From Paraphysomonas bandaiensis (taxonomy: Eukaryota; Protista; Chrysophyceae): 48,024 nucleotides of DNA. Under the pieces are notes generated by a model, which was given only the letters and a program-made list of their open reading frames with translations, was not told where the DNA came from and searched no databases. Shown here in pieces: positions 53 through 47,446 of the stretch. The translations under genes and the position numbers were made by a program. The stretch is from assembly GCA_965644295.1 (NCBI GenBank), contig CBFFRP010000531.1, positions 1-48,024 on the forward strand. The letters are read 5' to 3'. The stretch's first letter is position 1, and every line of letters starts with the position of its first letter.

Positions 53-1607
53 ATGTATGCATGTATGCATGTATGTATGTATGTATGTATGTATGTATGT
101 ATGTATGTATGTATGTATGTATGTATGTATGTATGTATGTATGTATGTATGTATGTATGTATGTATGTATGTATGTATGTATGTATGTATGTATGTATGT
201 ATGTATGTATGTATGTATGTATGTATGTATGTATGTATGTATGTATGTATGTATGTATGTATGTATGTATGTATGTATGTATGTATGTATGTATGTATGT
301 ATGTATGTATGTATGTATGTATGTATGTATGTATGTATGTATGTATGTATGTATGTATGTATGTATGTATGTATGTATGTATGTATGTATGTATGTATGT
401 ATGTATGTATGTATGTATGTATGTATGTATGTATGTATGTATGTATGTATGTATGTATGTATGTATGTATGTATGTATGTATGTATGTATGTATGTATGT
501 ATGTATGTATGTATGTATGTATGTATGTATGTATGTATGTATGTATGTATGTATGTATGTATGTATGTATGTATGTATGTATGTATGTATGTATGTATGT
601 ATGTATGTATGTATGTATGTATGTATGTATGTATGTATGTATGTATGTATGTATGTATGTATGTATGTATGTATGTATGTATGTATGTATGTATGTATGT
701 ATGTATGTATGTATGTATGTATGTATGTATGTATGTATGTATGTATGTATGTATGTATGTATGTATGTATGTATGTATGTATGTATGTATGTATGTATGT
801 ATGTATGTATGTATGTATGTATGTATGTATGTATGTATGTATGTATGTATGTATGTATGTATGTATGTATGTATGTATGTATGTATGTATGTATGTATGT
901 ATGTATGTATGTATGTATGTATGTATGTATGTATGTATGTATGTATGTATGTATGTATGTATGTATGTATGTATGTATGTATGTATGTATGTATGTATGT
1001 ATGTATGTATGTATGTATGTATGTATGTATGTATGTATGTATGTATGTATGTATGTATGTATGTATGTATGTATGTATGTATGTATGTATGTATGTATGT
1101 ATGTATGTATGTATGTATGTATGTATGTATGTATGTATGTATGTATGTATGTATGTATGTATGTATGTATGTATGTATGTATGTATGTATGTATGTATGT
1201 ATGTATGTATGTATGTATGTATGTATGTATGTATGTATGTATGTATGTATGTATGTATGTATGTATGTATGTATGTATGTATGTATGTATGTATGTATGT
1301 ATGTATGTATGTATGTATGTATGTATGTATGTATGTATGTATGTATGTATGTATGTATGTATGTATGTATGTATGTATGTATGTATGTATGTATGTATGT
1401 ATGTATGTATGTATGTATGTATGTATGTATGTATGTATGTATGTATGTATGTATGTATGTATGTATGTATGTATGTATGTATGTATGTATGTATGTATGT
1501 ATGTATGTATGTATGTATGTATGTATGTATGTATGTATGTATGTATGTATGTATGTATGTATGTGTGTATGTATGTATGTATGTATGTATGTATGTATGT
1601 ATGTATG

Positions 1608-1639
<32 letters not shown>

Positions 1640-1716
1640 TGTATGTATGTATGTATGTATGTATGTATGTATGTATGTATGTATGTATGTATGTATGTAT
1701 GTATGTATGTATGTAT
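53..1716. repeat. (TATG)n tetranucleotide microsatellite, about 1.66 kb
   Basis: Near-perfect TATG units with rare TGTG/TATA variants, preceded by (GTAC)/(GCAC) variant units at 21-50. Ends about 240 nt upstream of the CDK ATG. Confidence 0.99.
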
Positions 1717-11905: not shown

Positions 11906-12412
11906 GTGTATGTATGTATGTATGTATGTATGTATGTATGTATGTATGTATGTATGTATGTATGTATGTATGTATGTATGTATGTATGTATGTATGTATG
12001 TATGTATGTATGTATGTATGTATGTATGTATGTATGTATGTATGTATGTATGTATGTATGTATGTATGTATGTATGTATGTATGTATGTATGTATGTATG
12101 TATGTATGTATGTATGTATGTATGTATGTATGTATGTATGTATGTATGTATGTATGTATGTATGTATGTATGTATGTATGTATGTATGTATGTATGTATG
12201 TATGTATGTATGTATGTATGTATGTATGTATGTATGTATGTATGTATGTATGTATGTATGTATGTATGTATGTATGTATGTATGTATGTATGTATGTATG
12301 TATGTATGTATGTATGTATGTATGTATGTATGTATGTATGTATGTGTGTATGTATGTATGTATGTATGTATGTATGTATGTATGTATGTATGTATGTATG
12401 TATGTATGTGTG
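11906..12412. repeat. (TATG)n microsatellite, about 0.5 kb, between divergent genes
   Basis: Directly visible. About 110 nt from the minus-strand ATG at 11796 and about 90 nt from the plus-strand ATG at 12502. Confidence 0.99.
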
Positions 12413-23912: not shown

Positions 23913-26900
23913 TCATGTCACATGTTGCTTTCTGTGTCTGCAAGCTGATATTGCAGCCGCTTCCATTGCGGCAAGAGACTCCCAAGCATCCTCACTAAGA
24001 GTATCTACACCATACACACCAGGACAAGGGGCAGAATTGCAATGATGGACAGAGATACTTGAAGTTGATGAACTGGTTGACTCCTGACTCTGGCGTCTTG
24101 CGGAGAGTGTCATCTCCATGACCTTATCGAACTCCGCAATATCATCCAGAGGAGAAGTTCTAGAATACGGGAGAGAGTTAGACGGTGCTACTCCACTCGA
24201 TGAATGGCAGAAAGTACGAGAGCGACTGGGCGAGCTCCTTTCCACATCGGTAACTGAGGATTTCTTCGCTACGGCATTCTCCAAGAGGTAGGAGGCTTGT
24301 TGATCTGGTGCAACGACACCCATAGATGATCCAGAATGCGGATGAGAAGATGGAGGCGTTATTCCACCCGATATTTTGTTCGAAGTGGCACTCCAAGAGG
24401 TTTCTGGAGTTGGTGCAGCGGCACCCATAGAAGATCCAGAACGCGGATGAGAAGATGGAGGCGTTATTCCACCCGATGTTTTGTTCGAAGTGGCACTCCA
24501 AGAGGTTTCTAGAGTTGGTGCAGCGGCACCCATAGAAGATCCAGAACGCGGATGAGAAGATGGAGGCGTTATTCCACCCGATGTTTTATTCGAAGTGGCA
24601 CTCCAAGAGGTTTCTGGAGTTGGTGCAGCGGCACCCATAGAAGATCCAGAACGCGGATGAGAAGATGGAGGCGTTATTCCACCCGATGTTTTGTTCGAAG
24701 TGGCACTCCAAGCGGTTTCTGGAGTTGGTGCAGCGGCACCCATAGAAGATCCAGAATGCCGATAAGAAGATTGTGGCGCTACTCCATTCGATGCTTTGTT
24801 CGAAATGGTATTCAAGGAGGTTTGTTGAGTTGGTGCAGCAGCACTCATAGAAGTACCAGAATGTGGGTGAGAAGATGGCGGCGCTACTCCACCCATTTTG
24901 TTCGCAACAACACCCATAGAAGATCTAGAATGCGGATAAGAAGATGGTGGCGCTACTCCACTCGATGTTTTGTTAACTGCACTCTCCGAAGGGTAGGAGG
25001 TCCGTTGAGTTGGTGCAACGACACCCATAGAAGATCCAGAATGCCGATAAGAAGTTTGTGGCGCTACTGCCCCCGATGTTTTGTTCGTAACAACACCCAT
25101 AGAAGAACCAGAATGCAGATGAGAAGATGGCGGCATTCTCCCAGGCGAAGTTTTGTTCGCAACAACACCCATAGAAGTACCAGAATGCGGATGAGAAGAT
25201 GGCGGCACTACTGCCCCCGATGTTTTGTTCGCAACAACACCCATAGAAGAACCAGAATGCAGATGAGAAGATGGCGGCGTTATTCCACTCGATGTTTTGT
25301 TAACGGCACTCTCCGAAGGGTAGGAGGTCCGTTGAGTTGGTGCAACGACACTCATAGAAGATCCAGAATGCCGATAAGAAGTTTGTGGCGCTACTCCATT
25401 CGATGTTTTGTTCGAAATGGTATTCAAGGAGGTTTGTTGAGTTGGTACAACGACACTCATAGAGGATCTAGAATGCGGATGAGAAGGTGGCGGCGCTACT
25501 GCCCCCGATGTTTTGTTCGTAACACCCATAGAAGAACCAGAATGCAGATGAGAAGATGGTGGCGCTACTCCACCCGATGTTTTGTTAATGGCAATCTCCG
25601 AAGGGTAGGAGGTTCGTTGAGTTGGTGCAGTGGCACCCATAGAAGATCCAGAATGCCGATAAGAAGATTGTGACACTACCCCACCCGATGTTTTGTTAAC
25701 GGCATTCTCCGAAAGGTAGGAGGTACGTTGAGTAGGGTGGTTGTGGTGAATTGACATTGCCGGTTTTTGTTGACCAGGAGACGGAGACGTCTTTCTTAAT
25801 CCTATCGTCCTGGGATTAGAGTATACGCCTCTATCGTACTTAGTCTGGCCAGGAAGAGGGGGTTTACAGGGTGTGCGATTGATACCACAGCTAACATGTT
25901 TATCAGCAGGTTCCTGACTTAAGCGTTTGGCGGAAACAGCCATCGCAACGATTTTGTCGAACGCTTCAATATCATCAAGTAGAGCAGTCTCTGGGGGATC
26001 GTGCGAAGACGAAGTAGAAGATAAAGAGGACATTTGGCAGGCAATCCCAGAACGATGGAACAGGGGGTCGACCTCTACATCCACCACGCCTGGTTGAGAA
26101 CTTACTTGGGAGGACAGAGAGAATTGTGGTGAGCAGGGCATACCGGTTTCCACTTTTTGATGCAGGAGAGATGTGTGTATTTTACTCACTCTACCTGCAC
26201 TGTCGCAGAAATCGCCGCCAGTATTCACAACATTCGACCGTGAGGTTGCGTTGTGATAATGAGCGGACTGCTGCTGTTGAGGAATGTGGGCACGAAACTC
26301 TTCCTGTAGAGGTTGAACAGGGTACGTTTCAGAAGTGCTCTTCCTACTATTCTGGAATTTGTTTTCATTGACCGTGGTTTCATCTGCTTTTAACATAAGA
26401 AACAACGTAACATAGAAGGTGAAGGTAGTCTATCCGCTGTATCGGCACAAACTCACCGTTTTGCTCGTAATCCGAAGCATATTTCGTTTCCTCTTCAACG
26501 CTACCTTTCTTTGCGTTGGAATCAGCAATGCCAAAATTAGAAGTGCTAACTAATGCATCAAATGCATCGCTTCCCCTCTTAAGCATCAGCGAAGACCTTG
26601 GAAAGTTCTCCAAATCAGCTTTGAACCTATAACACATCCATATCCAGGTAAGAAATTGAGAGAATAGGCTATACATATTTGCCTACATACACATGGAGAT
26701 TTACGTAACTATCCGTACACACAGATATATATACACAGATGTCAACCCCTACACCTCTATCTATCTATCCATCTATCTATCTATGCATACAGAAATGGAC
26801 GTGAATCTTTCTATATATATCCATATATATACACCCGTTAACTACTATACTTATATATATAGCTCTGACAGTACATAGACATGTATATCTCAATACACAT

Positions 26901-33556: not shown

Positions 33557-34087
33557 ACATACATACATACATACATACATACATACATACATACATACAT
33601 ACATACATACATACATACATACATACATACATACATACATACATACATACATACATACATACATACATACATACATACATACATACATACATACATACAT
33701 ACATACATACATACATACATACATACATACATACATACATACATACATACATACATACATACATACATACATACATACATACATACATACATACATACAT
33801 ACATACATACATACATACATACATACATACATACATACATACATACATACATACATACATACATACATACATACATACATACATACATACATACATACAT
33901 ACATACATACATACATACATACATACATACATACATACATACATACATACATACATACATACATACATACATACATACATACATACATACATACATACAT
34001 ACATACATACATACATACATACATACATACATACATACATACATACATACATACATACATACATACATACATACATACATACATACA
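33557..34087. repeat. (CATA)n = (TATG)n on the minus strand, about 0.53 kb, between divergent genes
   Basis: Perfect array about 180 nt from the TSR2 ATG and about 165 nt from the helicase ATG. Confidence 0.99.
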
Positions 34088-38339: not shown

Positions 38340-40182
38340 ATATGACAATGTATTGCAATATATTGTAAAATATATTGATTGTTCGACCGGCCAAAATTCC
38401 CATCAATATTGTTTCTGTTAAAGTGGCGCACAATATATTGCAATATTATGATAGTCATATAAGAGAAGATCCTTAACTGTAGGGTAAAAAATACAAGTCC
38501 ATGTATACAAATATCCGGAAAATAAGAAAAAAGCCTATTTTTGATGTTATTTTCTATTTTTTATATGTATCGCCACCTCAAACAGCACTCTACACCTCTC
38601 CACATGTATGTACAGTACTTCTCTTAATATAGTATATATATCCTATAGTGACAAGAAGAGACAACTATAGGATATAAGAATGCTTAGTGGTATGATAACG
38701 ATGAGTGCATACAAAAGTAGGGACATTTACCGCTGTTTTTGGAGTCCGGTTGAAGGTGAACCAAACAAGCACGTATGCAAAGTCTGTGGGCGCGTACGAG
38801 TGCAGAATATATCGAATGGCTACAACAACTTGAAGAACCACACATTGTCGCATGGTGAGTGGGAAGATTCAATGAAGAAGTATTTAAGGGTTGTCTGCAC
38901 CAATGGTCCCATGGATGCTTTTGTTTTTTCCAACCTTCGGACAAAGCAAAAAACATTTTTGAGTGGGTAGAGTGGATTGTGGATGAAAATCTTCCGTTTA
39001 TTTTTTGTGAGAAGAAACTAACTAGAAAGAAGACTTGTTTGGGTAAGATATGTGCTAAAACAGTTAAAAAGTACATGAAACTGTTGGAGATGAAGTTACG
39101 CGAGATCATCAAAGATATGCTGCCGCCAACATTTGGTCTAATCATGGACGGTTGAACTGCGGATTGCTACCACTACAGTGCCATATTTGCCACCTTCTGT
39201 GACCGGAATAAGATTCCTAGTCAGATATTACTATCATGTGATGTACAAGAAGATATTGATGATTGCACTGTTTTTGACGAAGATTTACCCGATGAGGAGA
39301 AGTTATATGGATTCACTGCTGCCGATTGGTTCGATAATGTTGTGAGCGTTCTCAATAAATTCGGTGTTGAGGTTAATGCTGATAATGTTTGCGATATTGT
39401 TGAGTTGATAGGGACAACTGCGCTACAAACAGAAAGCTGGCGAACGATTCCGGTAATACCTTCGGGTAATACCTTATTGAGGGACTTCGGGGCAAAGTAT
39501 CCCCTATCTGCTTTACGGAAAGAGAGCTCCATTGTTAATGATCCGAATTTTGAGAATGGAATTGCAAAAATCCAAGCAGGCGAAGAATTTGATTGGACAA
39601 GGTCTGAGAAAGATGCTGTTAGAATATATCTCCATTCAGACAGTGATTGCAACAATACAGAGGATGATGAAGCTGGCGTTGGCTATGCGGAAAAAATTCT
39701 TCAGTCAGCTCAAAAAATTAAGAAACGAAAAGTTGAAATATCTAAGTACAGGTCAACAAGTCATGTAGTATGTACTTCCAATACATGTGAACGCCTGTTC
39801 AGCGTAGCTAAACTTATCATTTCAGTGTTGCGCAAAAGTATGCATCCTTCTACACTTAATATGCTGTTGTTTCTGAAAGCTAATCGACAGTTGTGGCCGG
39901 ATGCAAGCATATTTCAAATAATTTTGGATGAATTTGGTGATGTTGACGTCAGCGATGATGGATCAGAGGATGAGGACGAGGTGGATTTTTATTAGCTATA
40001 AGCAGTTGTTACTTACTAATACTAAAAATTGAATCTACGGGTGTGTTTACTTACTGCTTAGTCATACTAATATATTGCAATATATTGTAATTGTATTGTT
40101 GAGCCTGCTTAAAATCTCCATCAATAGTATTGATAGAACGCTAACTTACAATAGTATTGCAATATATTGTTTCCTAGCCCTG
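38340..40182 (+). mobile_element. Defective hAT-superfamily DNA transposon
   Basis: Right end reads TATTGCAATATATTGTTTCCTAGCCCTG (CAGGG-type terminus on the minus strand). Paired TATTGCAATA palindromes at both ends (38345-38447 and 40070-40170). The left terminus is degenerate and no target-site duplication is identified. Confidence 0.85.
38680..39995 (+). pseudogene. hAT transposase pseudogene
   Basis: BED-finger-like CKVC...NLKNHTLSH, a frameshift near 38930, and an in-frame stop in LIMDG*T (DGWT motif). The central catalytic region appears deleted. C-terminal dimerisation motif TSNTCERLFS...LLFLKAN. Confidence 0.88.
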
Positions 40183-40838: not shown

Positions 40839-41288
40839 TCATTTCGTGGAATCTTCATTAGAAATTACGGCCTTAAAGAAACCCTTTGGCTCCAGTTGCA
40901 AGTCATCATTTGTGTCAAATTGAAAGTACTGTTGATCAATCTCTGAGTCAGTAAGCTTTTCACCCAATCGAAGCAATACACGTTTAATCTGATGCTGATT
41001 AATAGTCCCGACAAGATCCTTATCAAACACATCGAATGCTTCTTGCATCTCAGCCCGACACCAGCTATCCGTAGACAACGTCATCGCCACTATGATGCTC
41101 ATGTATTCCTGAAAACTCACTGGTTTGGATGATTGCCCTCTCTCTATAAGTCTACCATCAGGCTCTATGCCATGAGCCTTCAGAGCCAAGAGGAGCTGAG
41201 ATCCTGATATCTGACCCTCGTCATTCTCATCAAGCATCTTGAATGTGTCCATGAATTCATTGTTGAGATCATCGCTGAGTTGTGCCAT
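40839..41288 (-). CDS. Calmodulin-like EF-hand protein with degenerate loops, intronless
   Basis: 149 aa. EFMDTFKMLDENDEGQIS, EMQEAFDVFDKDLVGTIN, LGEKLTDSEID. Confidence 0.9.
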   Translation of the reverse strand: MAQLSDDLNNEFMDTFKMLDENDEGQISGSQLLLALKAHGIEPDGRLIERGQSSKPVSFQEYMSIIVAMTLSTDSWCRAEMQEAFDVFDKDLVGTINQHQIKRVLLRLGEKLTDSEIDQQYFQFDTNDDLQLEPKGFFKAVISNEDSTK

Positions 41289-41397: not shown

Positions 41398-41916
41398 TAT
41401 ATGTGTATGTATGTATGTATGTATGTATGTATGTATGTATGTATGTATGTATGTATGTATGTATGTATGTATGTATGTATGTATGTATGTATGTATGTAT
41501 GTATGTATGTATGTATGTATGTATGTATGTATGTATGTATGTATGTATGTATGTATGTATGTATGTATGTATGTATGTATGTATGTATGTATGTATGTAT
41601 GTATGTATGTATGTATGTATGTATGTATGTATGTATGTATGTATGTATGTATGTATGTATGTATGTATGTATGTATGTATGTATGTATGTATGTATGTAT
41701 GTATGTATGTATGTATGTAGGTATGTAGGTATGTAGGTATGTAGGTATGTATGTATGTATGTATGTATGTATGTACGTATGTATGTATGTATGTATGTAT
41801 GTATGTATGTATGTATGTATGTATGTATGTATGTATGTATGTATGTATGTATGTATGTATGTATGTATGTATGTATGTATGTATGTATGTATGTATGTAT
41901 GTATGTATGTGTGTAT
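41398..41916. repeat. (TATG)n microsatellite with TAGG and TACG variants
   Basis: Between the divergent CaM-like ATG (41288) and the membrane gene ATG (41957). Confidence 0.99.
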
Positions 41917-41956: not shown

Positions 41957-43081
41957 ATGGACGAAGGCATCTCATTAAACAATTCCATTCTCGTCCGCTC
42001 AGTCAGGGACTCCTCGCCATTCAATATCAACTCTGCTCTTCCTTTCGATCTCGTATGGTGTAGAGGTATTGTAGGGAGCAGAAGAGGGTGTATATGGATT
42101 ACATCTCTATATATAATAGTCGGGATATTTTCCCTCGCTATTAGTTATTTTTATTCGATTATATCTTATAATGGGGCTTTTTTTATCTTCCGTGTGACAC
42201 AAGCCTTTCATATGATCGTACTACCTCCTTTATACATATGGTCATTACGAGCTGTGTTTACAAGTAAAGAGGTATCATATATACTCGAACACACACTACA
42301 CCATCATCCAAATATAAGACATCATTTCACATTGTTCTGTCGTGCTAATATCATATTAGTGTGCTGTGCTATTATTGCATACTGTGCAAGTATTAAAGCT
42401 GCATGGTATTTTAAGGTATTCTCTGCATTCATGGCTGGTTTTTATGTAGTGCCGTACGTCATCACATATGTCTTATTTATCTGTATATTAATAACTTATC
42501 ACCATTTATCTATTAGTTTTGTACATGATATAAGACTATATATGGGAGAGCCAGTGACTTTCACTGATGAAGATCGTCTATCTGATCATGTCATTAAGTA
42601 TCCTCAGAATGCTCTTGCTGACTTTCATCAGATCAGACAACGTTACTATCGCGCCCTTCTTTCATGTCGACATGCCTCTAGACGATGGGGTCCAATGCTT
42701 GGTATACTCCTCTTTTTTGCTGGGCTGTACGTAGTGTACGCTGTGTGGAACCTGTATGTCGGAGAGATTTCTACATCTGCACTTATCGGGTATATTGTGG
42801 TGGGACTAATTCAATTGGGTGAGATAGGTGTAGCTATTACCTCAGTCAATGGTGCCGCACAATTAGTTTGTCGTGACATTGCTGCGTATGGTATATATTT
42901 GGGGTTGCACGGGAAATTGGGACAAGAGCATACCCAGGATGTTACGCTGTTTGTGCAGTCTGCAATGCATTCCAGATTAGAGATCTCTTTCATGGGAAAC
43001 TTTGTGCTTCGGACACGAATGTTAATGGCAGTCGGGGGATCAATTATTGCAGCCGTTATTCCTGGAATTATTCTGAGATAA
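41957..43081 (+). CDS. Multi-pass membrane protein, candidate gustatory-receptor-like 7TM ion channel, copy 1
   Basis: 374-aa intronless ORF with about 7 hydrophobic segments, a long loop after TM4 and a C-terminus LEISFMGNFVLRTRMLMAVGGSIIAAVIPGIILR. The family assignment is by pattern only. Confidence 0.8.
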   Translation: MDEGISLNNSILVRSVRDSSPFNINSALPFDLVWCRGIVGSRRGCIWITSLYIIVGIFSLAISYFYSIISYNGAFFIFRVTQAFHMIVLPPLYIWSLRAVFTSKEVSYILEHTLHHHPNIRHHFTLFCRANIILVCCAIIAYCASIKAAWYFKVFSAFMAGFYVVPYVITYVLFICILITYHHLSISFVHDIRLYMGEPVTFTDEDRLSDHVIKYPQNALADFHQIRQRYYRALLSCRHASRRWGPMLGILLFFAGLYVVYAVWNLYVGEISTSALIGYIVVGLIQLGEIGVAITSVNGAAQLVCRDIAAYGIYLGLHGKLGQEHTQDVTLFVQSAMHSRLEISFMGNFVLRTRMLMAVGGSIIAAVIPGIILR

Positions 43082-43141
43082 TCCCAGTTTTTTTGTTGCG
43101 CCATATATCACTGTGTGTTTCGCTGCTATAGGGCGTATTAT

Positions 43142-43240
43142 CAGGCTTGCGTAACAATTACTTGGTTTTAATAGTGGTAATTTCAATTATTAGTATTGGT
43201 AATTGTTGCCAATTTAGTTGCAATTAATTGGTTGGCTACA
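43142..43240. mobile_element. AATT-rich MITE-like element at the duplication breakpoint
   Basis: Starts CAGGCTTGCGTAACAATT, where similarity between the two 3' flanks ends. Related to 19795-19867 and 5395-5536. Confidence 0.55.
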
Positions 43241-43486
43241 TTTTATATAGCATCTTAAAATATATAGCTACTGATCATAGATACAAACTCGTTAAGGGTT
43301 ACTATACACTCTAACCTCGGCACGTAAGAGAGGAATAAAGAATAAAGCATGTCAAATATCGTTGGCAAAGCACAAAAACTGAGAACCTCAACAACGATCG
43401 TCTAGATACATAGCATATAAAAGATGACTGCAGATCTTCAACTGCTTCGAAATATTCAAGTATAGTAGTGTAAATGAAGTTAGAAG

Positions 43487-44273
43487 CATGTACGTATGTA
43501 TGTATATACGTATGTATGTATGTATGTATGTATGTATGTATGTATGTATGTATGTATGTATGTATGTATGTATGTATGTATGTATGTCTGTATGTATGTA
43601 TGTCTGTATGTATGTATGTATGTATGTATGTATGTATGTATGTATGTATGTATGTATGTATGTATGTATGTATGTATGTATGTATGTATGTATGTATGTA
43701 TGTATGTATGTATGTATGTATGTATGTATGTATGTATGTATGTATGTATGTATGTATGTATGTATGTATGTATGTATGTATGTATGTATGTATGTATGTA
43801 TGTATGTATGTATGTATGTATGTATGTATGTATGTATGTATGTATGTATGTATGTATGTATGTATGTATGTATGTATGTATGTATGTATGTGTGTATGTA
43901 TGTATGTATGTATGTATGTATGTATGTATGTATGTATGTATGTATGTATGTATGTATGTATGTATGTATGTATGTATGTATGTATGTATGTATGTATGTA
44001 TGTATGTATGTATGTATGTATGTATGTATGTATGTATGTATGTATGTATGTATGTATGTATGTATGTATGTACGTATGTATGTATGTATGTATGTATGTA
44101 TGTATGTATGTATGTATGTATGTATGTATGTATGTATGTATGTATGTATGTATGTATGTATGTATGTATGTATGTATGTATGTATGTATGTATGTATGTA
44201 TGTATGTATGTATGTATGTATGTATGTATGTATGTATGTATGTATGTATGTATGTATGTATGTATGTGTGTAT
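43487..44273. repeat. (TATG)n microsatellite, about 0.79 kb
   Basis: Ends with the same GTGTGTATCTATGCATATC junction as the 41.4 kb array. Confidence 0.99.
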
Positions 44274-44313
44274 CTATGCATATCATTGTTAGTTATTCTT
44301 CGTAGGTGTTAAT

Positions 44314-45438
44314 ATGGACGAAGGCATCTCATTAAACGATTCCATTCTCGACCCCTCAGTCAGTGAATCCTCATCATTCAATATCAATTCTGCTCTTCCT
44401 ATTGAACTCGTATGGTGTAGAGGTATTGTAGGGAACAGAAGAGAGTACACGTGTATTACATCTCTATATATAATAGTCGGGATATTTTCCCTCGCTATTA
44501 GTTTTTTTTATTCGATTATATCTTATAATGGGGCTTTTTATATCTTCCGTATGACACAATCCTGCCTTATGATCGTACTACCTCCTGTATACATATGGTC
44601 ATTACGAGCTGTGTTTACAAGTAAAGAGGTATCATATATACTCGAACACACACTACACCATCATCCAAATATAAGACATCATTTCACATTGTTCTGTCGT
44701 GCTAATATCATATTAATGTGCAGTGCTATTATTGCATACTGTGCAAGTATTAAAGTTGCATGGTATTTTAAGGTATTCTCTGCAATCATTGCTGGTTTAT
44801 ATGTAGTGCCGTACGTCATCACATATGTCTTATTTATCTGTATATTAATAACTTATCACCATTTATCTATTAGTTTTGTACATGATATAAGACTATATAT
44901 GGGAGAGCCAGTGACTTTCACTGATGAAGATCGTCTATCTGATCATGTCATTAAGTATCCTCAGAATGCTCTTGCTGACTTTCATCAGATCAGACAACGT
45001 TACTATCGCGCCCTTCTTTCATGTCGACATGCCTCTAGACGATGGGGTCCAATGCTTGGTATACTCCTCTTTTGTGCTGGGCTGTTCGTAATGTACGCTG
45101 TGTGGGACTTGTATGCCGGAGAGATTTCTACATCTGCACTTATCGGGTATATTGTGGTGGGACTAATTCAATTGGGTGAGATAGGTGTAGCTATTACCTC
45201 AGTCAATGGTGCCGCACAATTAGTTTGTCGTGACATTGCTGCGTATGGTATATATTTGGGGTTGCACGGGAAATTGGGACAAGAGCATACCCAGGATGTT
45301 ACGCTGTTTGTGCAGTCTGCAATGCATTCCAGACTAGAGATCGCTTTCATGGGAAACTTTGTGCTTCGGACACGAATGTTAATGGCAGTCGGGGGATCTA
45401 TTATTGCAGCCGTTATTCCTGGATTTATTCTGAGATAA
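44314..45438 (+). CDS. Multi-pass membrane protein, candidate gustatory-receptor-like 7TM ion channel, copy 2
   Basis: 374 aa, ungapped paralog of 41957-43081 with about 33 amino-acid differences by manual count. Confidence 0.8.
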   Translation: MDEGISLNDSILDPSVSESSSFNINSALPIELVWCRGIVGNRREYTCITSLYIIVGIFSLAISFFYSIISYNGAFYIFRMTQSCLMIVLPPVYIWSLRAVFTSKEVSYILEHTLHHHPNIRHHFTLFCRANIILMCSAIIAYCASIKVAWYFKVFSAIIAGLYVVPYVITYVLFICILITYHHLSISFVHDIRLYMGEPVTFTDEDRLSDHVIKYPQNALADFHQIRQRYYRALLSCRHASRRWGPMLGILLFCAGLFVMYAVWDLYAGEISTSALIGYIVVGLIQLGEIGVAITSVNGAAQLVCRDIAAYGIYLGLHGKLGQEHTQDVTLFVQSAMHSRLEIAFMGNFVLRTRMLMAVGGSIIAAVIPGFILR

Positions 45439-45920
45439 TCCCAGTTTTTTTGTTGCGCCATATATCACTGTGTGTTTCGCTGCTATAGGTCGTATTAGCA
45501 GTGATCGAATAGCACTTTGTATAGTAGATGCCATGTCGACGGTGTTTTATTTGGCCGGGCATATCCAAAGTATTGCTAAACCATAGAGTATATCTCGTTC
45601 TTGCAACCACAGAGTCTGTCTCTAATTTGTTTTTAATTTAATTTGTTTTACATGACTACATTAGTGCCATGTCCCATGTCCACCTTTCGTGATTGAACGT
45701 CTCATATTAAACATGGCGCAATTGATGTGTATGATAGTCATGCTACTCTTGTATAATTGCAGAACAACTACATGTGCATCATTATAAGCACTATTCCACA
45801 CCAGTGATGTTTGCAAAGAGTTAATTTCTTCTACAAAACTAGTTGCGCAATATGGAAAAAGCAAACCTATATTATTTGATGGCTCGTAAACGATTATTCA
45901 CTTAGACGCATACATATATA

Positions 45921-47446
45921 CTACGACTGTATATTAAAGGTATTTACAAAGCTGGTTAACGATGAAAGCATGGCCTCTTCTGGATTCTCCTCCTTCTTTC
46001 GGGCGATGATACTTTTCTTTTCATTTTCAGTAAAACGAAACATAGTAACGATAGCGTTCTCCATGTGATCTTTCACAACAGCGTCTTTACAGGATAAATA
46101 CTGGTGAATTAGATTTCTGATGTATTGGTACTTGGCAGCTTCAATCCCACCACCAGGCTGTGCTGATGACGGCGAGGGAGAGGATGCATCCCCTCTTCTT
46201 TTCTCCCGACGCCTCTCTCGCTCCTGCTCGAGAACCAACACCCGACGCTTGAATTCTTTGTACTCAGCCTGGAGTTGCGCGTATGCCCTCTCAAGAGACG
46301 GATTGTGCCCCTTCCCTAAATCACCACCCGTCGACAAACCATCACCGCGGCACAGAGAACCCTCCGACACAGAGCCGGAGATAGTGCCCCCTCTTGAACC
46401 TCCAAGTGCTCTAAGTCTATCTTCTAGGGCCTCCTTCTCAATTAAACAAGATTCAAATCTTTCTCGCCACTGGGAGGCCGCCTCAGATTCTCCACCACGG
46501 CTACGGAGCTGTTCGTTCTCCCTCGCCAGCTGCTCATACGCGCTGCGCCACCGACGAGACTCCTCCTCCGCAGTAGACAAGGCTCCCTATACCCATACAA
46601 CAGTTAGAGACTATTTTAGGCTTAGTGTTGAGTTAATACACACCTGAAGTTTACGCACCGCCCCAGGACTGTCCTGGAAATCCCCATTACTACCAGAGGG
46701 ATCACTAGCACCCCCCAGAAACCCAACAGATCCAGCTGTCATTATGCTCTGCATGCTACCATCTCCTGCACCCACCCTGGTCCCACCCACTGTGGGTAAC
46801 GATAGGTGCGCCGCCCGGGCTTCGAGCTCTTTGTCGCGCTGCTTGCGTGCTATCTCTGTTTTCACCTTGTACCTAAAAAAATCTCATGAGAACGAATATG
46901 CGAAAACGGAAGGCACAAACCGTCTAAACTCCTCCACTATTCTCTCTACATTCTTTCGACTCTCTGTTTCCTACACATAAAAAATACCAGACTAAGTTAG
47001 AAAGCAGACAGATTTGCATCTTTTCAGCTACTAACAATCTGCGCAGACTCCTCAACTGTTAGACATCGCTGTGGTTTCTTTAATGGAGCTCCTGGAATAC
47101 GTTGAATATAATCATCTAATTCTTCTTCACTTGTGAACTCTATCCATTCATCATTTTTCCCTCCACTATACTCTACTAATATCCATATATGTCCCTCTAC
47201 ATCTACACGACGAGATAGATGTCTCGGATAACAGTCTATGTCATCTGTATCTTGCAGTGTGTTCCCTCCAGATCGACGAGAGGACCTCTGATTGGCTTCC
47301 TCTAATGCAGATTTGAGTTGATTAATTTGATTATCTTTTTCTACTATTAAATTTCGATGTGATTCTAAACTGCTACGAGCCATACTTAATAAACGCTTAT
47401 ATTTACCCACCACATCATCATGAGAGGTAGATGAGGTGTCTTCCAT
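45921..47446 (-). CDS. GRIP-domain coiled-coil protein (golgin-like), 4 exons
   Basis: C-terminal KYQYIRNLIHQYL..MENAIVTMFRFTENEK is GRIP-like. Coiled-coil exons are joined by short GT-AG introns. Probable start MEDTSST at 47446. Confidence 0.82.

What the first reader, a model, noticed from the sequence alone, without database searches (positions are those of the whole stretch)
41957..45438. Tandem pair of candidate gustatory-receptor-like (7TMIC) chemosensory ion channels in a protist-like genome
Seen: two intronless 374-aa proteins with about 7 hydrophobic segments, a long loop ending IRQRYYRALLSCRHASRRWGPML before TM5, AITSVNGAAQLV after TM6, and a terminal ISFMGNFVLRTRMLMAVGGSII followed by a last short hydrophobic helix. 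Known: insect GR/OR, GRL and plant DUF3537 proteins share this layout, including a 'G.F.l.r..l' split TM7, and remote homologs have been reported in some unicellular eukaryotes. Inference: these are ligand-gated channels of that superfamily, possibly an undescribed chemosensory family in this lineage. The canonical TY.....QF motif is absent, so the call is not secure.
Basis: partly seen in the sequence, partly recalled or inferred. Interest (0 to 1): 0.85.

Follow-up and report, generated by a model that had tools for sequence, protein, structure and literature searches.

The report
Insect-taste-receptor-fold channel pair in flagellate
A bacteria-eating marine flagellate carries two recently duplicated genes whose proteins fold like insect taste and smell receptor channels and differ mostly on the outward, ligand-facing side; they are new members of a known superfamily whose function outside insects is untested.

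The parts
41957..43081 (+). Copy 1: intact 374-aa 7TMIC-fold protein
   Evidence: ORF; model; fold matches; pieces in polyA run X15
44314..45438 (+). Copy 2: intact 374-aa paralog, 91% identical
   Evidence: its variant letters seen in runs X4, X5, X7
42971..43012 (+). S7a-S7b hairpin (residues 339-352), the most conserved stretch of the family
43013..43078 (+). Predicted pore helix S7b (353-374): no TY...QF; conserved P369 at the BmGr9 I440 position, I372 at Q443, L373 at F444
   Evidence: end points of structural alignments, paper PMC11100771, column counts
41401..41912 (+). TATG microsatellite upstream of copy 1; holds the left break of the duplicated unit
43082..43140 (+). 59 nt of 3' flank shared with copy 2 (45439-45497); right end of the duplicated unit
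43142..43485 (+). Left part of a hAT-type non-autonomous element (MITE), internally deleted and cut off by the TATG run; its inverted repeat starts where the homology of the two copies ends
   Evidence: 66 matches genome-wide; three full copies of 0.8-1.0 kb have terminal inverted repeats and 8-bp target duplications, one perfect and two with one mismatch
43490..44270 (+). TATG microsatellite upstream of copy 2

Best explanation
The two genes encode subunits of a 7TMIC (insect GR/OR-superfamily) channel of the Class-A type in a phagotrophic chrysophyte. SHOWN computationally: the fold, the N-in topology, an unnamed eukaryotic family around them, and a recent duplication. INFERRED from insect homologs: four subunits pack through the cytosolic S4-S6/S7a anchor, S7b lines a central pore, and a small molecule binding between the outer halves of S2-S6 opens a cation path. 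Most likely use: sensing dissolved or prey-derived chemicals, with the two copies tuned to different ligands while still able to co-assemble. The gate must differ from the insect Phe/Gln switch, since the family has a hydrophobic residue at the Gln position, a proline at the inner hydrophobic gate and small residues (Ala, Ser, Gly) on the pore face. The pair most simply arose by unequal crossing-over at TATG runs between a MITE-bearing and a MITE-free allele (inferred). Confidence is about 0.97 for the fold, about 0.65 for a ligand-gated channel, about 0.45 for an external chemosensory role.
Against: No functional data; per PMC12635824 it is unknown whether non-insect homologs are chemoreceptors. 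TY...QF absent. The pair keeps only 19 of 26 strongly conserved family columns, the lowest level seen (the homologs help define the consensus, so this is biased), and sits on a long branch. dN/dS is 1.2 overall and 2.5 in the outer halves, the latter not significant locally (p=0.15); long identical tracts (274 and 217 nt) could be gene conversion. Only three subfamily members in the genome. Tetramer not modelled. Single-sequence fold was uninformative (pLDDT 52).
Confidence: 0.62

Rival explanations
1. True 7TMIC-fold proteins that are not ligand-gated chemoreceptors: a leak or otherwise gated channel, a transporter or scramblase-like protein, or an internal sensor.
For: The pore helix lacks the Gln/Phe switch and has Pro at the inner gate; removing that gate in BmGr9 (I440A) raises resting current. 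No function is known for plant, protist or vertebrate members.
Against: The outer halves of S2-S5 are the variable part within the family and between the copies, as expected for a tuned ligand pocket.
Confidence: 0.25
2. The pair is a decaying or relaxed branch: the differences are near-neutral and the clustering reflects patchy gene conversion.
For: Overall dN/dS about 1.2; loss of seven conserved columns, five in the anchor; long branch; synonymous changes are also rare in the inner part.
Against: Both frames are intact; only one of 33 changes (a conservative D/E) touches a column conserved at 60% or more; RNA pieces exist.
Confidence: 0.15
3. About the arrangement only: the two copies are alleles of one locus that the assembler joined through TATG runs.
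For: The junction is the one a haplotype mis-join would give; no public contig crosses the TATG run into copy 2; both flanks are single-copy.
Against: No leftover contig with the shared flank exists; the assembly resolves TATG runs of over 1.6 kb in this window; the copy 1-MITE junction is exact in independent run X7.
Confidence: 0.12
4. A GPCR or other seven-helix family.
For: The family profile hits 5-HT2C/BRIL chimeras at E 2e-7.
Against: That hit spans two helices plus the engineered cytochrome insert and falls to E 0.5 with the C-terminal profile; no GPCR appears among the listed fold matches; topology is N-in.
Confidence: 0.01

Closest known systems
Insect gustatory and odorant receptors (BmGr9, DmGr43a, DmGr64a, Orco, MhOR5)
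   Different: 8-12% identity; no TY...QF; Pro at the I440 position; no gating Gln; three genes, not dozens; function untested.
Class-A eukaryotic 7TMICs, including protist GRLs (Benton 2020, PMC7746228; Himmel 2023, 10.1101/2023.08.30.555482)
   Same: Size, topology, short IL1, degenerate TM7 motif, small per-genome families, unicellular host.
   Different: A separate sequence family with no named or NCBI/UniRef member among 28 clusters checked. Neither paper's main text mentions stramenopiles; their sequence sets were not available, so overlap is not excluded.
Plant DUF3537 (PF12056)
   Same: Same superfamily; TM7 motif also unrecognisable.
   Different: No PF12056 match in the window proteins, in 45 family members or in the genome search (the last has no positive control).
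PHTF-like Class-B 7TMICs
   Same: Same core fold (published).
   Different: Class B has a long IL1; here IL1 is about 30 residues.

Membership tests
7TMIC superfamily | Intracellular N-terminus, extracellular C-terminus | tested here: met
   Positive-inside bias across the family and collinear superposition; DeepTMHMM itself not available
7TMIC superfamily | Inner loops longer than outer loops | tested here: met
   Family means 31/96/68 against 10-12 residues
7TMIC superfamily | Long S4-S6 forming a cytosolic anchor | tested here: met
   H150-196, H219-268, H273-317
7TMIC superfamily | Split S7 (S7a, hairpin, S7b) | tested here: met
   H323-338, loop, H353-373
7TMIC superfamily | N-terminal re-entrant S0 element | tested here: met
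   H24-27 and H30-40 at pLDDT 95; alignments start at residue 16-29
7TMIC superfamily | Tetramer with S7b-lined pore | not testable with these tools
   Only monomers can be folded here
7TMIC superfamily | Ligand-gated cation conduction | not testable with these tools
   Needs electrophysiology
Class-A Euk7TMIC | Short IL1 (not PHTF-like) | tested here: met
   IL1 about 30 residues
Class-A Euk7TMIC | Phylogenetic placement in the Class-A clade | not tested
   Reference sequence set not available
Insect GR / animal GRL (PF08395) | TYhhhhhQF motif in S7b | tested here: not met
   1 of 4 positions in the pair; 0 or 1 of 4 in all 28 homologs. Papers call the motif diagnostic but not definitive
Insect GR / animal GRL (PF08395) | Pfam 7tm_7 score above cut-off | tested here: not met
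   No hit for the pair; two homologs below cut-off
DUF3537 (PF12056) | Pfam match | tested here: not met
Class A GPCR | Rhodopsin-like fold, N-out topology | tested here: not met

The most novel reading that the evidence does not exclude
A chrysophyte-type 7TMIC family works as true external chemoreceptors with its own gate (proline-kinked, small-residue pore helix), and the tandem pair is a tuning receptor caught diversifying its ligand pocket, possibly assembling with the more conserved C269 paralog in a tuning-plus-partner arrangement that parallels OR/Orco.
Probability: 0.15. Interest if true: 0.8.

Novelty: new member of a known kind. Interest (0 to 1): 0.45.

Why it matters
What 7TMICs do outside insects is an open question, and the receptors that bacterivorous flagellates use to sense prey are largely unidentified. 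This pair is a convenient test case: intronless coding sequences from a culturable genus, nearly identical in anchor and pore, differing mostly around the predicted ligand pocket, so any difference in tuning maps to about 20 residues. The family's proline-bearing pore helix would also show how the fold gates without the insect Gln/Phe switch. The presence of 7TMICs in protists is itself already published, which caps the surprise.

Tried and rejected
Pfam and PDB sequence searches with the window proteins: nothing. Word-index homolog searches: nothing with the single protein, one known hit with the alignment. GPCR hit rejected as a BRIL-insert artefact. PF08395 and PF12056 searches of the genome were blank but had no positive control. 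A first outer/inner split (17/95 against 2/210, p=8e-8) was drawn after seeing the changes, so the hydropathy-defined split (p=0.002) is the one relied on. Assembly error as the source of the differences was rejected. Host lineage of the homologs could not be established; one neighbour gene is 67% identical to its counterpart here, which is not diagnostic.

Full report
OBSERVATION. The window holds two intact + strand ORFs of 374 codons at 41957-43081 and 44314-45438. They differ at 42 nucleotides and 33 residues. Each follows a TATG microsatellite, and they share 59 nt of 3' flank. The host is a eukaryote of 62.6 Mb in 669 contigs. A window eIF3i fragment is 92% identical to an MMETSP1103 protein filed under taxid 36769, Paraphysomonas, so the host is a Paraphysomonas-like chrysophyte; the species is not determined.

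SEQUENCE FAMILY. Neither protein hits Pfam or PDB sequences. An exhaustive phmmer search found 49 relatives at 20-40% identity for most. Of 28 clusters looked up, all come from ENA, JGI or Logan assemblies and none has a name beyond 'hypothetical protein'. The long contigs examined look eukaryotic, and three members come from one sample. The genome holds one further paralog, G000:C269 (24% identical); profile searches found no more (lower bounds). In a tree the pair sits on a long branch and does not group with C269.

PORE HELIX. The last aligned pairs fix the register: model residue 373 falls on BmGr9 F444, MhOR5 V468 and Orco L473, and 372 on BmGr9 Q443 (residue roles from PMC11100771). Assuming no gap in S7b, the TY pair is Ala-Ala here (Gly/Ala-Ala in the family), the gating Gln is Ile/Val/Leu/Phe in all 28 homologs, and the inner gate I440 is Pro in 26 of 28.

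DIVERGENCE OF THE COPIES. Thirteen changes lie in residues 9-47. The rest cluster at 64, 76-92, 135-162 and 254-268; residues 163-253 and 269-343 are identical. With helix midpoints set by family hydropathy, 14 of 96 outer and 9 of 215 inner residues differ (p=0.002). In insect GRs the outer parts of S2-S6 line the ligand pocket. This fits tuning divergence, but dN/dS is 1.2 overall, the outer-half excess is not significant against local synonymous sites (p=0.15), and the long identical tracts are non-random (p=0.0002), as gene conversion would also give. The pair has also lost seven strongly conserved family residues. Positive selection is therefore plausible, not shown.

REALITY AND EXPRESSION. 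All 27 listed variant letters equal the copy-2 letter, so both versions exist in at least three studies; the mosaic contigs are what collapsing two similar copies would give. The polyA metatranscriptome X15 has two pieces identical to copy 1 across diagnostic sites and one piece with three differences where exactly three diagnostic sites lie, probably copy 2 (letters not shown). These are contigs, so DNA carry-over is not excluded. No splice joints appeared.

HOW THE PAIR AROSE. The spacer 43142-43485 is the left part of a dispersed element with dozens of copies; full copies have terminal inverted repeats and 8-bp target duplications, typical of hAT elements (family assignment from my own knowledge). 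Its end coincides with the end of homology between the copies, and copy 2's flank is an empty site. Unequal crossing-over at TATG runs between a MITE-bearing and a MITE-free allele would give this layout and would make the two copies former alleles. A haplotype mis-join gives the same layout; it is less likely but no read available here spans the junction.

NOVELTY. 7TMICs in unicellular eukaryotes are published, and their function outside insects is unknown. The two main papers do not mention stramenopiles in their text, and their sequence sets were not available. Earlier notes of this scan list several other 7TMIC candidates in this genome; I did not check them, and one may be the C269 paralog. 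Verdict: a real, probably expressed, new member of a known superfamily, from an unannotated family with a distinct pore helix. Interest 0.45.

Noticed in passing
fold searches with the model of window 41957-43078: Four uncharacterised giant-virus proteins (Catovirus A0A1V0SCD1, Yasminevirus A0A5K0UB49, Edafosvirus A0A3G4ZRZ0, Mimivirus LCMiAC02 A0A4D5XEV6) top the viral search at prob 1.0, TM 0.46-0.49, and an Atlas cluster that is 57% viral (Nucleocytoviricota) matches at TM 0.63/0.74. Giant viruses of protists may encode 7TMIC-fold proteins; one paper search found no description.
   Followed up: no
G000:C269:23188-24468 (-), loci L004/L008: Third, single-ORF family member that keeps the conserved anchor residues lost in the tandem pair; candidate partner subunit.
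   Followed up: partly
window 38680-39995 (+): Broken hAT transposase remnant (Dimer_Tnp_hAT, E 0.002) with stops and a frameshift; it does not carry the MITE's terminal repeat.
   Followed up: partly
window 40839-41288 (-): Calmodulin-like EF-hand gene lies head-to-head with copy 1, about 670 bp away, mostly TATG repeat. No sign of this neighbour beside the homologs examined.
   Followed up: partly
window 45921-46580 (-): 3' exon of a GRIP-domain golgin-like gene, tail-to-tail with copy 2.
   Followed up: no
window 72-1713, 11909-12408, 33558-34085, 41406-41909, 43511-44266: Very long TATG microsatellites recur through the window and create spurious long ORFs.
   Followed up: no
window 23913-26405 (-): Long Ser/Pro/Thr-rich ORF built of imperfect tandem peptide repeats.
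   Followed up: no
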